DNA from: Podarcis muralis
Lineage: Eukaryota
Direction of reading: 5' to 3'
Length of the DNA stretch: 64,000 nucleotides
NCBI RefSeq assembly: GCF_964188315.1
Contig: NC_135667.1
Coordinates: 17,112,001-17,176,000 of the forward strand
The notes beneath the pieces were generated by a model. It made no database searches. It was not told the origin of the DNA and saw nothing but the letters and a program-made list of their open reading frames with translations. The position numbers and the translations under genes are program-made. Of the stretch, positions 40,685 to 49,225 are shown piece after piece (within the stretch, counting starts at the first letter, position 1; the number at the start of each line of letters is the position of its first letter).

Positions 40685-43600
40685 AGGAGGAGTCCTGTGC
40701 TTTTGCAAAAGCTGCCCATGGCTGACCTTTCATCCTTTAGGGCAGCGGAAGAGTGCCCAGGAATTCCGACACTTTGTGTGACCCTTCTGAAAATCCCAGC
40801 ATGCCCTCTTCCTCTGCCCTGAATCAGCTCCTGTGTTTGCTTCTTCCACGGCTGGATCTGGGCTCTTTTAAGCTTCCAGCCCCAGAATCATGCAACTAAC
40901 AAGTGAAATAATTAATTTTCTTAAGTGAAATGATTAAATAAAAGGACTGAAGGACTCAGCAGGATGTCTATGAAATAAGAAAAGCAGGGGTGGGAGAAAT
41001 CAAGACTTGCAAGATGAATGGAAAGCTCCCGTCCTCCAGGATTTTCTGGCTGGGAACCACGGAGGGTGGATGTTCCAGTGCTCTGGGACAATGGTGGGAA
41101 TTCTGCCACTGGCATTCAAAACACTGAAAGGGCAGAGCAGAGCAAATTGGGGCCAGAAGAGCAAGAAAAAGCACCCAAAGAAGAGTAGTGGAGGGGAACC
41201 TGTGGCCTTTCACATGTTGCTGGAATACAGCTCCCACCATCTCTGCCCTTTGGCCCTGCTGGCTGGGGCTGATGGCCAATGGAGTCCAACAACAGGCTCA
41301 CAATGACTGCCCTGGAATGTGGCCAAAATTAGGACAATTTTATATCGTGCCTATTGCACTGGCTGCTCATACAGAACAAGGAAATGGCATGTTTCTTGAC
41401 CATTCGTAAAATACAGTAGGTTCTTAAGGCAATAGTTGTACTCCATATTTGCATGAGTTTCTTCCTCTGTTTAAAGCACTTACAGTTCCTCCCCTTAGGC
41501 TAGTATTATCCCTATATTGCATAGGAGAGGACTCGGTGAATAATGGCATGCCTAAAGCCACTAAGTGAATGAAATGAAAGTTCAGCCACAGACTTCTCAC
41601 TGTTAAAGTATGTCGAGGGTATGTTTACTAATTATTGAAAGCTGCTTTATAGAAGCCCAGTTCCCTTGTTAATGCTTAGCCCCAGCAGTTGGCATGACCA
41701 GGGAGGAGAGCTGTGGGTTTGGTCTGGACATCTACGCGTTTGCATATCCTCGCTAAGTCATGAGCTTTGTGTTTTCAGAACAAGTAGGTCCTCCATTAAG
41801 ATGTGATCTTCTCCCAGCATAATCAGAGTTCTCGCTCTTAAGGAGGCTAAAATAAAGCCCATATGGGGAACCAAGAGCATATACAAATGAGCCCCCCAAA
41901 GAACTTAAAAACCCTTAATTACCCATAATGACCATGTGAACAGATGTGAAAATGCTTAAGCCTGTGTCTATTTTGTGCTTTTTAAAGCAAAAGATCCAAG
42001 ATTGCACTTAGGAAAGCTCAGTTTCTCCCCCGCCATAAACAACATGTTAAAAAAAATATCTGTGTGCTTCTGATCTGCTCTTTTAGGAATCACAACATTG
42101 ATAGAACAGGACTATGAGAGCCTTGATTAGCAAGAGGCATCCTGCTTAAGGAACAACAGCAACTCTTGCCAGGTTTTATTAGAACCGATGTCTTGGTTTT
42201 TTAATGTTTGAATCTTTTTTGTAAGTGGTTTTTGTTCCACATTTTGGGAAACTGGGGAATAAATTATTAAATAAACAGAAGCGCTGTTGATTTTCCATTT
42301 CTAGAGAGTTAAAAGTTAAAATACACCGCCGACAGCCAAGTCAGTTACACCGTGCAATACTCAACCTGTAGGGGCACAATCACTATCCTGCAATTAGTAG
42401 TAAGCTGTGCCAAGGAATCACAGCAGGGCCCTGTAAAGCGTTCAGCAACAAGAGGCATTGCCCAGAATGAGGCTGGGACATTTCCTATTTCCCCATCCAG
42501 CCCTCCTTTTCCAACGTGGGCTGCCAAATTTCCATCCAGCCGCTGTACTTGTAAGCCTTTAACAGCAGCATGATGTGTAGATATTCACAACTGGTAGTGT
42601 TATCCCCATGCTGAGAAACTGGTTGAATTTATGCACGTAGAGCCACTAATAAAGGCACAAGAGCACATTTGGCCAGTGCTTTTCTTGGTCAGTTGGCAAT
42701 CCTATTTCCAGCTCAAGGCCTGGAGTTTATACATGAGTTGTACCCTATTCCCCCCCGGGCTCCATTGCAGGCATCACTTTTGCGAGTCCAGCATGCTCCT
42801 GAAGCATACTTTGCCTTTTAAATGCTTAAGAACAAAACAAGCGCCTACTAAATCAGGCCAATGGCCAATCTCTCATCCTGTTCTCACAGTGGCCACCCAG
42901 ATGCACATGGGAAACCTGCAAAAGCACTCTTCCCTTCTGTGCCTTCCAGCTTCGGGCTGTTGCCACGATGCAAACGGTCAGTTTCAGGCGTGGGTACAGC
43001 AAAGTGCTGAAAGTGTACTTCTAACTTGGCAGAACTTGCTTGGATACAAAAACGTTGAGTGAGATGCTCAAATTTTGCAGTCCTCCCAGTGGCACCTGCT
43101 GGCTTGTGCTCAGAATCCTGCCCATGTCTTGATACATATTCCAGCTCCAGCAAGTGATCCCATGATAACGTTAAATAAATAGATGAAACCTGACCCAGGG
43201 CGGCCTTTCTGGATCTGAATGACAATGGATAGTTTTCCTTTCTCTTAAGATGCTCCCCCAGTTTCACGACTTCGCCAAATGACAGAATGGATAGTACAGA
43301 CCCTTCTCCCCAACCCCTCCCCACCCCTGGAAGCTGCTTGCCCTCAGACATCCTTTGATCATCAGATTCGAGATGCACACAAGCAACAAAAGCTCTAGAA
43401 GCCACCCCTCTGCCAACAGCATAGCCTGCCTTCTGAGCCTCCCAGCGCAAACACCCGGCTGCAGCCTCTTCGCCTTGGATACAGGAGTAAATTCCTTTGC
43501 TCTCTGCTCAAATCTGTCACACTAACAGGAGACAGCAGGAACTTCGTCAAGACCTTCCTTGGCTGCAACAAAAAGGAGAAGGTGAAATTCAGCCCTTGTT

Positions 43601-45874: not shown

Positions 45875-48800
45875 CTACCACGAATGGCGCCTCTGGTGGT
45901 TCACGACGTGCGACCTCCGCGTGAATCTCTTCCCGCAGTAAGCGCACTGGTGGGGCTTCTCCCCCGAGTGGACGAGGAGGTGCTTCGTGAGGGTGGTGTT
46001 CCTGTTGAAGCTGTTCCCGCATTCCGGGCACTGGTAGGGCTTCTCGCCCGTGTGGATCCTCTCGTGCCGAATGAGGTCCCACCTCTTGCGGAACCTTTTC
46101 CCGCACTCCTTGCACAGGTGGCGCTTTGCTTCCGGGTCGGCGAGGACTCCTCTGAGCCCCCTGTCCTTGATGACCCGGACCGAGAGGCAGCCCCCCTTCT
46201 GCTGCATCCCCACGCTGCGCTCGTTCCCGTGCGGCCTTCTAGGGTCTCCTCTGGGGAAAACAGCCTCCCCGAATCCTCCCGGAGCTCTCCTTCCCGGCTC
46301 TTCCACTGCAGGCTGGTGAAGCTCCTTGGCAACAGCTCTGCTTGCAAAGTAGCTTTCTGTTGGGAGAAAAGAGAGAGGGGCGTTTGGGGTGGAGGCGCCA
46401 ACATGCCATGCTCTGCATGCTGGTGATCTTGGGCTCAGTCCTGGGCATCTCTGGTAACAGAAAGGAGGGCAAGCAGAGCTCCTGGGGACTGCAGTTTGTT
46501 AAAGGCTGCTGTATCGCAGAAACCTAACCCTACAAAAATGGAAAAGCCATCCTTCTGAGGCACTTCCTTGTTGCAGTTACCTTGCAAGCTGTTATCCTCG
46601 TCAGCTGGTTTGGTTTCCCTGCGAAGGTGTCTCTGTGTCGAGTCCGACAGGTCTACAATGGGGGAGTTTACAATAACCATCTCAATCGGCACCGTTATCT
46701 GAAAGGAACAGAACGGGGAACGGTTGAATTTAGATGGCGCAGAACAAGAAGCCCCGACAATAACGGACTGGCATTACAAGCTACAAGAATTTGCTGAAAT
46801 GGCAAATACCCTGAGAGGCGATTCAAAACAAAAATTTATGGAAAAGTGGGATAGATATAAAACATATGTTCAAACATACAGTAAAGGTTCACTATCTATG
46901 CTGGCATTTGATTGACGTTGGAGTGAGACTGAGTTGAGAAATAAGACTAAGAGCACATATTGACATAGGAATGTATTAGATAATATGTAAAGAAATATAT
47001 AATAATAAGAGTACATTCATTTGTAAAAAAGGAATATACAACGGGAAAGGCAGGAAGTCTAGTGTGTTGGTATGTATATGATTTTTGGAAAAAATTGTTT
47101 GTTTTTTTCTTTGTTCTTTCTTTCTTTTCTTTGTTTGTTTCATTTTCTTTTTAGGTATATAAAATCTGTATATAATTTTTGTATACATGTTGGAAATTAT
47201 AGTAAGTCCTGTAATGTAATATGACAATGTTTACCGATGAAATATAAGAATGTTAATAAATAAATAAAAAGGAAAAAAAAGAATTTAGATTGTGCAGAAA
47301 CTGATGCCGAGTGGCACCAATAGAAGCTCAGTTTCTTTATTCAACAAGTCAGGTTTCTAACCATTATGGGTACACAAAGATAAGTTTCAATCGCATGGGT
47401 TTGAAATGAAATGTTTTGCCAGAAGAAAAATGAAAGCGTGGTCAAGACTCCCCGTGGCCAAATGACGAGATTCCCCATACAAATGTTGACAGTGACCACA
47501 ATCTACGGTTCTGGGAGAAAGGCAGGATATATAACAACAATAACAATAATAATATAATACCATCTGAAGGATGTGAATAAATAAGTGTTAGCAGCCAGGG
47601 TGCATACAGATTATCAGAGCAGAAACACTGGACGAGGGAAAGTGGAGCAACAGCCTTGCAGGGAATGAAACCAGAAAAGAACTGCCGTCGCTGTGCCTCA
47701 AGAGGCTGGCAGAGTGTGATGCAATCACCACAGCTAGTATATGAACAGAGTTTGTTGACAAGCTCCCCCCCCCCCCCCCCCGGCAATTCTGTGGTGAGGA
47801 ATAACCTTCCCACTTTCAGACGAAACCACAGCCCACTTTGTGTTGGCCACAGGGGGCTACAGCGGATTTTTAATTGATCTCCTGTGCATCCAACACACAC
47901 AATCTACACTGCTTTTAGAGGCAAAATGTTCAGTATCTGCTGTTACTCAATAGTTTGTAGGTATTCCCCCCCCCCCAAGTACATATACAGTGGAACCTCA
48001 GTTGTTGAACGCTTCAGAAGTCTAATGTTTTGGCTTTCGAACGCCGACAACCAGAAAGGGAATGCTTTTGTTTTCGAACGCGCCTCAGAAGTCAAACGGC
48101 TTTCGAGGGGCGTTTTTCCGTTTTTTCCAATGGATTTTGCTGACAGCCCATTGCACCTCAGTTGTCGAACGTTTCAGAAGTCAAACAGTCTTCCAGAATG
48201 GATTATGTTCGACAACCGAGGTTCCACTGTATTCAGGGAAAGATGGAATCTGCCAGGACAGTTCTCAAGATGACTTGCACCCTCGCGTCAATTTTTCACA
48301 CTGTTCTTGCTGATTATACCCCTAGCGATATGTCCCCACCCTTTCTGCTAGACAGAATTCAATTTCCTGTTTGCAAACCCATGAAACCCTGTCGGCACCC
48401 CCAGAAAAGACCAGGGCCAATTATGTCCCATACCTGTTGGGCCCATCTCTCGGTCTCCTGCTGCTCCTGCAAAAACTCCTCAGCCAGAGCCACGGCCCGG
48501 TCGCAGGTCTCAGGCCCACGTTCCCTGATCCAGTCTTGCATTTCCTGCGGCAGGATGACAAGGAACTGCTCCAAGATCAGCAGGTCCAAGATCTGCTCCT
48601 TGGTCTGGCTCTCGGGCCTCAGCCAACGGTGGCAAAGCTCCTGGAGCTGCTGGCACGTTCCTCGTGGCCCCTCGGCGTCCTGGTAACAGAAGTGCCGGAA
48701 GCCTTGGCGATGGGCCTCTGTGGCCATGTAGCTGTCCAGCCTCAAAATGGCCACCTTCACCTTCCCATAGTCGCCCTTGTCTTTCGCATCCAAACCAAAA

Positions 48801-49225
48801 TAGGCCTGCTGGGCTTGGCCACTGAGGACGGGCACAAGTCGAGTTACCCACTCCTCTCTAGGCCACTGAGAAGCATCGGCCACTCGCTCAAAGGTGGCCA
48901 GGTAGGCCTCAGTGTTGCCCCCCTGGGACAGTGGAGGCAACTGTGGGTTGTCCCGCACTGAGGCCGCCACTGGAGTGGGCACCACCTCCAACACCCGCTG
49001 CCATTGGCAATCCCAGCTCTGAGGCGGCTCCTCTGCCAGCTCCTGCTTCACCCTGGGCACAGACGCTCCTCTCGCTAGCTCCTCGGCAGCGCCACAGGGG
49101 CTTACGCTGGGGAATTTACCATTTCCTTCTGGTGAAGCGCTCGCTGCTTGGCTCTGAGCCTCCATTTTGACTCGAACCGGCAATGGGAGTGCCAGGTCTG
49201 CCATTTCTCCTTGGGGAGCCGCCAT
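45875..49225 (-). CDS. SCAN-domain C2H2 zinc-finger protein with extended Gag-capsid-like N-terminal region, about 463 aa
   Basis: Exons 49225-48434 (phase 0), 46698-46581 (phase 1) and 46356-45875 total 1392 nt in frame. SCAN motif LQELCHRWLRPESQTKEQILDLLILEQFLVILP...WIRERGPETCDRAVALAEEF. Three C2H2 fingers joined by TGEKPY and SGEKPH linkers. No KRAB exon found. Confidence 0.85.
46745..47280 (+). mobile_element. 5'-truncated L1-like LINE
   Basis: Encodes PTITDWHYKLQEFAEMANTLRGDSKQKFMEKWDRYKTY (like an L1 ORF2 C-terminus), followed by an AT-rich 3'UTR and an AATAAA/A-rich tail. TSD of about 19 bp: gaatttagatggcgcagaa (46726-46744) / gaatttagattgtgcagaa (47281-47299). Confidence 0.75.
47988..48229. 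mobile_element. Tc1/mariner (Tigger-like) MITE
   Basis: TA-flanked TIRs CAGTGGAACCTCAGTTGT / ACAACCGAGGTTCCACTG. Confidence 0.8.

What the first reader, a model, noticed from the sequence alone, without database searches (positions are those of the whole stretch)
48434..48945. SCAN-ZNF retains an apparently complete retrotransposon Gag capsid (CA-NTD plus SCAN/CA-CTD)
Seen: directly upstream of the SCAN domain is LPPLSQGGNTEAYLATFERVADASQWPREEWVTRLVPVLSGQAQQAYFGLDAKDKGDYGKVKVAILR (aa about 96-162). It matches the pattern I recall for the Ty3/Gypsy capsid N-terminal lobe (D.EAFL..FER.A....WP...W...L...L.G.AQ.AY..L......DY..VK.AIL). Established: SCAN derives from the C-terminal capsid domain of Gmr1-like Gypsy elements, mammalian SCAN proteins generally keep only that lobe, and domesticated full capsids (Arc, PEG10, PNMA) can assemble particles. 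Inference: this host gene, with introns, SUMO-type VKME/VKQE motifs and three fingers, is an intermediate in SCAN domestication and might oligomerise beyond dimers or form capsid-like particles. Extended capsid homology in lizard SCAN genes may already be partly described; assembly function is untested to my knowledge.
Basis: partly seen in the sequence, partly recalled or inferred. Interest (0 to 1): 0.75.

Follow-up and report, generated by a model that had tools for sequence, protein, structure and literature searches.

The report
Lizard zinc-finger gene keeps two-lobed capsid
This squamate zinc-finger gene carries, ahead of its SCAN domain, a conserved four-helix lobe, so it keeps both lobes of a retrotransposon capsid protein; this "extended SCAN" layout was described in lizards in 2011 and is typical of reptile SCAN genes.

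Summary
On the minus strand, an intron-containing gene has three coding exons: 49225-48434, 46698-46581 and 46356-45875. It encodes a SCAN domain at aa 170-257 (Pfam E=7e-39) and three C2H2 fingers. The quoted segment, aa 96-162, lies directly upstream of SCAN.

Pfam and a PDB sequence profile miss that segment in this protein. AlphaFold2 (pLDDT 90) folds it as a four-helix bundle joined to the five-helix SCAN lobe. Foldseek aligns the whole model over about 150-200 columns with Arc, PNMA2, dArc1, Ty3, MLV and HIV capsid proteins. Eight of 54 paralogues hit Pfam Retrotrans_gag; in the three tuatara paralogues inspected the match runs across the lobe boundary.

Across seven squamate orthologues the N lobe is as constrained as SCAN (pN/pS 0.13 against 0.11).

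The layout is not special to this gene. An N-lobe profile finds 5241 protein clusters, and every named one is a host SCAN fusion protein of a squamate. The word search adds tuatara and turtle paralogues.

[quoted passage not shown] Calling it an "intermediate" is imprecise, because it is the retained ancestral state.

Capsid-like assembly remains untested, and nothing here supports it.

The parts
48434..49225 (-). First coding exon, 264 codons. It holds the N-terminal tail, the capsid N lobe and the SCAN lobe, and ends CAG followed by a GT donor at 48433-48432.
   Evidence: ORF and translation; sequence read; orthologues map over this whole stretch to its 3' end.
49160..49171 (-). VKME (aa 19-22), a SUMO-consensus-type motif (hydrophobic-K-x-E).
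   Evidence: The pattern is kept in 7 of 7 orthologues although the tail is only 47% identical. SUMOylation itself is an inference.
49040..49051 (-). VKQE (aa 59-62), a second SUMO-consensus-type motif.
   Evidence: identical in 7 of 7 orthologues.
48989..49015 (-). WDCQWQRVL (aa 71-79), a conserved motif upstream of the N lobe. The family form is W-[ED]-x-Q-W-Q-x-[FV]-L.
   Evidence: A looser search pattern for this motif matches 226 of 320 reptile ESCAN proteins, most often as WEAQWQEFL. aa 60-95 have pN/pS 0.20. It was not modelled.
48719..48940 (-). Capsid N lobe (CA-NTD-like), aa 96-169. Predicted helices are at aa 105-118, 123-133, 136-143 and 153-168; the last continues into the first SCAN helix.
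   Evidence: AF2 models; Foldseek; family conservation; pN/pS 0.13.
48455..48718 (-). SCAN domain, the capsid C lobe, aa 170-257.
   Evidence: Pfam PF02023, E=7.1e-39; PDB SCAN structures.
46581..46698 (-). Second coding exon, a linker of 39 codons plus 1 nt. It has an AG acceptor and a GT donor.
   Evidence: Sequence read; tblastn of orthologues; no Pfam family.
45875..46356 (-). Third coding exon, with three C2H2 fingers (about 45884-46120) and a TAG stop at 45877-45875.
   Evidence: Pfam zf-C2H2, three stretches; sequence read; orthologue mapping.

Best explanation
This is a host transcription-factor gene of the extended-SCAN (ESCAN) zinc-finger class. It is an intron-containing orthologue found across Squamata and annotated elsewhere as 'ZSCAN16-like'. 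Its N-terminal module is a whole two-lobed retrotransposon capsid protein: a four-helix N lobe followed by the five-helix SCAN lobe. Shown here: the gene structure, the SCAN domain, family-wide conservation of the N lobe, its predicted capsid-type fold, and purifying selection on it equal to that on SCAN. Inferred: the SCAN lobe mediates homo- and heterodimerisation, as in mammalian SCAN proteins. The N lobe, rigidly coupled to SCAN through a continuous helix in the model, probably adds a second protein-protein surface, either a partner or peptide binding site as in the Arc N lobe or an extra oligomerisation contact. The C2H2 fingers bind DNA, and the two conserved hydrophobic-K-x-E motifs in the tail may be SUMOylated. 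The two-lobed form is the retained ancestral state of host SCAN genes. It is neither a novelty nor a transitional form of this gene.
For: Gene model. SCAN. Orthologues at 86-92% identity over aa 88-263 in Rhineura, Sphaerodactylus, Liasis, Sceloporus, Ophiophagus and Vipera; paralogues in tuatara and turtles cover the N lobe. AF2 model: pLDDT 90.2, pTM 0.72, four plus five helices. Foldseek against PDB: rat Arc CTD 7r24_A over 155 columns (TM 0.56/0.63, prob 1.00), PNMA2 8rb3 over 180, MLV 6hww over 209, dArc1 6s7y, Ty3 6r24 over 154, HIV CA. N lobe alone: PEG10 CA lobe 7lga (TM 0.72, rmsd 2.1 A) and human Arc N lobe (TM 0.56-0.69). Foldseek against BFVD: Gag and coat proteins of reverse-transcribing viruses. 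Ty3 CA-NTD is a four-helix bundle and its CA-CTD has five helices (PMC6525542). PF03732 Retrotrans_gag hits 8 of 54 paralogues; in P0011 the match runs aa 140-220, across the lobe boundary. pN/pS: N lobe 0.128, SCAN 0.111, aa 1-59 0.50. Literature: ESCAN derives from a full-length Gmr1-like CA and is joined to ZF/KRAB in Anolis (PMC3406341).
Against: Pfam finds nothing on the N lobe of this protein itself. A profile of it finds no solved capsid by sequence. Foldseek E-values are weak: 1e-2 for the whole model and 0.25 or higher for the 82-residue lobe. A small four-helix bundle is a fold that Foldseek can match loosely. I did not obtain a direct alignment to a Gmr1-like Gag: both searches that could have reached one returned only host paralogues in their visible lists. 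The primary paper is not held in the library. The role of the N lobe is inference only.
Confidence: 0.85

Rival explanations
1. The two-lobed capsid module still assembles. The protein would form pentamers, hexamers or closed capsid-like particles, as Arc, PEG10 and PNMA2 do, with the zinc fingers taking the topological place of nucleocapsid.
For: Both CA lobes are present and under strong constraint. PNMA2 and Arc capsid structures are among the Foldseek matches over both lobes. The fingers lie C-terminal to CA, where nucleocapsid lies in Gag.
Against: No assembly test could be run, because no multimer prediction tool was available. No Pfam family matches aa 1-87 or the linker exon. There is therefore no sign of an Arc-type N-terminal domain, which mammalian Arc needs to form capsids (abstract of PMC8121366, listed), and no CCHC knuckle. 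The solved SCAN structures in PDB are deposited as homodimers or two-chain entries. Thousands of paralogous DNA-binding factors share the module, which fits a combinatorial dimerisation code better than particles. The model joins the lobes with one continuous helix rather than a flexible hinge.
Confidence: 0.08
2. The N lobe is not a retained CA-NTD. It would be a later tandem duplication of the SCAN lobe, or an unrelated helical region that merely adopts a similar four-helix fold.
For: The best Foldseek matches of the isolated lobe include CA C-terminal lobes such as PEG10 7lga, RSV and HIV CTD. The two capsid lobes share one core fold (PMC6525542), so fold alone cannot separate NTD from CTD.
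Against: The SCAN HMM does not match the N lobe even at E<=10. Profile-profile comparison of N lobe against SCAN lobe gives probability 0.25% or less. The Retrotrans_gag profile aligns collinearly across the lobe boundary in tuatara paralogues. Whole-model alignments to two-lobed capsids cover both lobes in order. The literature derives ESCAN from a full-length CA.
Confidence: 0.05
3. The locus is a decaying retrotransposon gag fragment or a pseudogene, not a functional host gene.
For: The capsid-derived sequence is of transposon origin.
Against: The reading frame is intact across three exons with canonical GT-AG introns. Orthologues exist in distant squamate lineages with pN/pS about 0.12 on both lobes. 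No protease, integrase or reverse-transcriptase family appears in the Pfam hits of the seven long relatives scanned.
Confidence: 0.02

Closest known systems
Extended SCAN (ESCAN) zinc-finger genes of lizards (Emerson and Thomas 2011, J Virol 85:12043; summarised in PMC3406341)
   Same: A conserved extension directly N-terminal to SCAN, which together with SCAN represents a full-length Gmr1-like capsid protein. It is fused to C2H2 fingers, is a host gene with introns, and has expanded in squamates.
   Different: Nothing essential differs. This gene is a short-array member with three fingers where its orthologues have two. It is conserved as an orthologue across Squamata and is not one of the lineage-specific copies.
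Mammalian SCAN-ZNF proteins (ZNF24, ZNF174, MZF1, PEG3; PDB 3lhr, 1y7q, 2fi2, 4bhx)
   Same: The SCAN lobe is 43-53% identical in the Foldseek alignments (sequence matches). The N-terminal position in a C2H2 protein is the same, and dimerisation is presumably the same.
   Different: From the literature, not tested here, mammalian proteins keep only the C-terminal capsid lobe. This protein also has the four-helix N lobe and a conserved W-x-x-Q-W-Q motif upstream.
Domesticated two-lobed capsid genes that form particles (Arc/dArc1, PNMA2, PEG10) and the Ty3 capsid
   Same: A predicted four-helix N lobe plus five-helix C lobe. Foldseek alignments cover both lobes (7r24, 6s7y, 8rb3, 6r24).
   Different: Sequence identity is only 12-16%. 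The protein is fused to a DNA-binding finger array. No Arc-type N-terminal domain, protease or CCHC knuckle was found. Assembly is unknown.
Gmr1-like Ty3/mdg4 retrotransposon Gag
   Same: It is the proposed source of both lobes (literature).
   Different: This locus has introns, has no PR-IN-RT downstream, and has orthologues across squamates. A direct alignment was not obtained here.

Membership tests
SCAN domain family (PF02023) | Match to the SCAN profile above the curated cut-off | tested here: met
   131.9 bits against a cut-off of 27, aa 170-257.
SCAN domain family (PF02023) | Five-helix fold related to the retroviral CA C-terminal domain | tested here: met
   The AF2 model has helices at aa 170-177 (the end of the bridging helix), 186-201, 207-224, 227-236 and 241-262. 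SCAN crystal structures are the top Foldseek hits. This is a prediction only.
SCAN domain family (PF02023) | Self-association into dimers | not testable with these tools
   No multimer prediction or experiment was available.
Extended SCAN (ESCAN) = full-length Gmr1-like capsid in a host gene | A conserved segment directly N-terminal to SCAN, shared across non-mammalian SCAN genes | tested here: met
   All 120 listed homologues align from query residue 28 or earlier of the 176-residue piece, most from residues 5-22. There are 7 invariant and 15 nearly invariant columns and 5241 clusters.
Extended SCAN (ESCAN) = full-length Gmr1-like capsid in a host gene | The N-terminal segment folds as a capsid N lobe (four-helix CA fold) placed before the C lobe | tested here: met
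   AF2 pLDDT 90 for the whole piece and 82 for the lobe alone. Foldseek matches over both lobes to Arc, PNMA2, Ty3 and MLV. The lobe alone matches the PEG10 CA lobe and the Arc N lobe at TM 0.56-0.72. These are predictions and the E-values are weak.
Extended SCAN (ESCAN) = full-length Gmr1-like capsid in a host gene | Sequence homology of the N-terminal segment to retrotransposon Gag | tested here: inconclusive
   This protein has no Pfam hit. Eight of 54 paralogues hit PF03732, the best at E=1.6e-5, collinear across the lobe boundary. No Gmr1-like Gag was retrieved for a direct alignment.
Extended SCAN (ESCAN) = full-length Gmr1-like capsid in a host gene | A host gene, not a transposon copy | tested here: met
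   GT-AG introns, a finger exon, orthologues across Squamata, and pN/pS about 0.12.
Particle-forming domesticated Gag proteins (Arc, PEG10, PNMA2) | A two-lobed capsid domain | tested here: met
Particle-forming domesticated Gag proteins (Arc, PEG10, PNMA2) | Self-assembly into capsid-like particles | not testable with these tools
   This needs multimer modelling and EM.
Particle-forming domesticated Gag proteins (Arc, PEG10, PNMA2) | Accessory assembly or cargo parts (Arc N-terminal domain, CCHC nucleocapsid, protease) | tested here: not met
   No Pfam family matches aa 1-87 or the linker exon. The C-terminus carries C2H2 fingers only.
Gmr1-like LTR retrotransposon (active or decayed copy) | gag followed by PR-IN-RT in one intronless unit | tested here: not met
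   Downstream of the capsid exon lie introns and a C2H2 exon.

The most novel reading that the evidence does not exclude
The thousands of reptile ESCAN transcription factors, this one included, might use their complete two-lobed capsid module to build oligomers beyond dimers (capsomer-like pentamers or hexamers, lattices or closed shells) on chromatin. Alternatively, the N lobe might be an Arc-like peptide-binding pocket that recruits partners. Either would be a function lost in mammals when the N lobe was dropped.
Probability: 0.1. Interest if true: 0.75.

Novelty: already known. Interest (0 to 1): 0.3.

Why it matters
The result confirms, with a confident structure prediction and a selection test, that reptile SCAN zinc-finger proteins carry a whole two-lobed capsid protein. 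They do not carry only the C-terminal lobe familiar from mammals. The N lobe has been held under constraint as strong as that on SCAN across the distant squamate lineages compared (gecko, iguanian, amphisbaenian, snakes). What the N lobe does is unknown. Interest in domesticated capsids (Arc, PEG10, PNMA2) is high, so a simple biochemical test of the oligomeric state of ESCAN would be worthwhile. The anatomy itself is not new.

Tried and rejected
1. Pfam on the N lobe alone and on the lobe plus SCAN found nothing beyond SCAN.

2. A profile of 53 N lobes against PDB sequences returned only chance-level hits.

3. I tried twice to reach Gmr1-like Gag-Pol polyproteins. One attempt was an exhaustive profile search with the N lobe. 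The other was a word search with a 1430-aa squamate SCAN-BED-hAT protein restricted to its ESCAN region. Both visible lists were filled with host squamate paralogues. The seven long hits scanned by Pfam were SCAN-ZNF, SCAN-KRAB-ZNF or SCAN-BED-hAT proteins.

4. The primary paper, Emerson and Thomas 2011, is not held in the library. I relied on the summary in PMC3406341. Searches for 'ahSCAN', 'ESCAN' and 'extended SCAN' added nothing further.

5. The tandem-duplication-of-SCAN hypothesis was rejected by hhalign.

6. Four orthologue proteins could not be traced to DNA. Three genome loci and three Logan contigs were used for the selection test instead.

7. Synonymous divergence is near saturation, so some corrected dS values were undefined. 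I therefore give uncorrected pN/pS for all segments.

8. The spliced protein was never joined. Every search used single exons by reference.

9. No contig that I took for human was met. Human SCAN-domain entries appeared only as rows in PDB result tables and were not saved or pursued.

Full report
**What is there**

The feature lies on the minus strand. An open frame runs from 49225 to a CAG codon at 48436-48434, followed by a GT donor at 48433-48432. Squamate orthologues map onto three coding exons:
- 49225-48434, 264 codons;
- 46698-46581, a linker exon with an AG acceptor and a GT donor;
- 46356-45875, with three C2H2 fingers and a TAG stop.

All searches were made exon by exon, by reference.

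The first exon holds a SCAN domain at aa 170-257 (PF02023, 131.9 bits, E=7.1e-39). It matches solved SCAN domains of ZNF24, ZNF174, PEG3 and MZF1 at E=2e-26 to 9e-19. VKME is at aa 19-22 and VKQE at aa 59-62.

**Is the upstream segment more than chance?**

Pfam sees nothing on it in this protein. A profile of 53 such segments finds no solved structure by sequence. It is nevertheless one of the best conserved parts of the protein.

A word-based search with aa 88-263 returned orthologues that are 86-92% identical over that stretch. They come from Rhineura, Sphaerodactylus, Liasis, Sceloporus, Ophiophagus and Vipera, are about 445 aa long, and are annotated 'zinc finger and SCAN domain-containing protein 16-like'. 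The same search returned over a hundred paralogues from squamates, tuatara and turtles. All of their alignments begin within the first 28 residues of the query piece, most within residues 5-22, so they cover the upstream segment.

In 53 sequences the segment has 7 invariant and 15 nearly invariant columns: F, E, A, W, Y, K and L, plus the W-P, L-x-G and D-Y-x-K-V-K-x-A-I-L motifs. A profile of this segment alone, scored against 1.84 billion cluster representatives, gave 5241 hits at E<=0.001 and 1301 at E<=1e-10.

I checked 7 of the hits by Pfam, and 14 more are named. All are host SCAN fusion proteins of squamates: SCAN-ZNF, SCAN-KRAB-ZNF or SCAN-BED-hAT. None carries protease, integrase or reverse transcriptase.

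**Is it a capsid N lobe?**

AlphaFold2 on the 54-sequence alignment of aa 88-263 gave a confident model (mean pLDDT 90.2, pTM 0.72). In exon numbering:
- the first three N-lobe helices are at aa 105-118, 123-133 and 136-143;
- the fourth N-lobe helix, from aa 153, runs without a break into the first SCAN helix, giving one helix over aa 153-177;
- four further SCAN helices are at aa 186-201, 207-224, 227-236 and 241-262.

That is four helices followed by five. Ty3 has the same count: a four-helix CA-NTD and a five-helix CA-CTD, with both lobes sharing the 'CA/SCAN fold' (PMC6525542).

Foldseek of the whole model against the PDB first lists SCAN crystal structures. Their TM-scores are poor despite 43-53% identity, which I attribute to domain swapping in the SCAN dimer (Ivanov et al. 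2005, title cited). It then lists two-lobed capsid proteins aligned over both lobes:

| Target | Entry | Columns aligned | Other scores |
|---|---|---|---|
| Rat Arc CTD | 7r24_A | 155 | TM 0.56/0.63, prob 1.00, E=9.5e-3 |
| Human Arc CTD | 7r23 | 152 | |
| PNMA2 capsid | 8rb3, 8uyo | 180 | |
| Immature MLV capsid | 6hww | 209 | |
| dArc1 | 6s7y, 6tap | 149-159 | |
| Ty3 capsid | 6r24 | 154 | |
| Many HIV-1 CA entries | various | about 146-204 | |

A separate model of the N lobe alone (pLDDT 82) matched only capsid lobes at the top of its list. These were the PEG10 CA lobe 7lga (TM 0.72/0.70, rmsd 2.1 A), the human Arc N lobe (TM 0.56-0.69), and RSV and HIV CA-CTD. The E-values were not significant (0.25 or higher), as expected for an 82-residue helical bundle.

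Against predicted viral structures, nearly all of the listed hits are Gag or coat proteins of reverse-transcribing viruses, including a fungal metavirus ORF1.

At the sequence level, 8 of 54 paralogues reach Pfam Retrotrans_gag (best E=1.6e-5). In tuatara P0011 the match spans aa 140-220, which is profile positions 6-89 of 97. It runs from the second half of the N lobe into the first half of SCAN, as expected for a collinear capsid.

The N lobe is not a duplicated SCAN. The SCAN HMM does not touch it, and hhalign of N lobe against SCAN lobe gives no signal.

**Selection**

I extracted the orthologous first exon from three genome loci (Sceloporus, Vipera, Ophiophagus) and three Logan contigs. 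I then computed Nei-Gojobori statistics for all 21 pairs:

| Segment | Mean pN | Mean pS | pN/pS | Mean aa identity |
|---|---|---|---|---|
| aa 1-59 | 0.298 | 0.591 | 0.50 | 47% |
| aa 60-95 | 0.131 | 0.644 | 0.20 | 74% |
| N lobe, aa 96-169 | 0.068 | 0.532 | 0.13 | 86% |
| SCAN, aa 170-257 | 0.073 | 0.655 | 0.11 | 85% |

With Jukes-Cantor correction the N lobe has dN 0.072, dS 1.08 and a ratio of 0.067. Corrected dS is undefined for some pairs in the other segments because synonymous sites are saturated.

**What is already known**

A 2012 review (PMC3406341) summarises Emerson and Thomas (J Virol 2011). [quoted passage not shown] Later work treats SCAN as the C-terminal capsid lobe only and documents the large squamate expansion (bioRxiv 10.1101/2025.03.03.638093; PMC8321522). 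The primary 2011 paper is not held in the library. I found no paper on the structure or oligomeric state of the extended form.

**Interpretation**

The gene is an ordinary, well-conserved member of the ESCAN zinc-finger class. 'Intermediate in domestication' is imprecise, because this is the retained ancestral state shared by thousands of reptile genes.

The most likely mechanism is inference from mammalian SCAN proteins and from the fold. The SCAN lobe would dimerise. The N lobe, coupled to it by a continuous helix in the model, would provide a second interaction surface. The fingers would bind DNA.

Capsid-like assembly cannot be excluded, but nothing here favours it:
- no Arc-type N-terminal domain, CCHC knuckle or protease is present;
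- the solved SCAN structures are dimers or two-chain entries;
- the module is spread over a very large family of DNA-binding factors.

I give that reading about 0.1.

**Limits**

The fold evidence rests on predictions and on Foldseek scores that are individually weak, although consistent across three searches. I did not obtain a direct alignment to a Gmr1-like Gag. The loss of the N lobe in mammals is taken from the literature and was not tested here.

Noticed in passing
window 48989-49015 (minus), exon aa 71-79: The motif WDCQWQRVL lies about 25 aa upstream of the N lobe. A looser search pattern for this motif matches 226 of 320 reptile ESCAN proteins, most often as WEAQWQEFL. aa 60-95 have pN/pS 0.20. 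Conserved capsid-derived or host-added sequence may therefore extend beyond the four-helix lobe.
   Followed up: partly
window 45884-46120 (minus): The window's gene has three C2H2 fingers. The orthologues P0004, P0006, P0008 and P0010 have two. The middle finger (C-P-E-C ... H-L-L-V-H) is extra here.
   Followed up: no
window 47985-48232: A 248-bp element with 26-nt terminal inverted repeats, 92% complementary, lies in the intron about 200 bp downstream of the capsid exon. It looks like a MITE-type insertion.
   Followed up: partly
window 43319-43563 (minus): Weak matches (59% and 90% identity) to the C-terminal part of Rhineura isoform X2 (P0001), which lacks zinc fingers. This may be an alternative 3' exon giving an ESCAN-only isoform.
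   Followed up: no
related proteins P0227, P0317, P0325, P0328, P0332, P0336, P0337, P0344, P0349: In squamates the same two-lobed ESCAN module is fused to other DNA-binding or transposase-derived parts besides C2H2 arrays. These are BED plus hAT, Tigger/jerky-like DDE_1 plus HTH_Tnp_Tc5, MULE plus FLYWCH, Myb_DNA-bind_4, and FAM200-like.
   Followed up: no
window 49040-49051 and 49160-49171 (minus): Both hydrophobic-K-x-E motifs are kept in all seven orthologues, within a tail that is otherwise only 47% identical. This suggests they are functional, and SUMOylation is plausible.
   Followed up: partly
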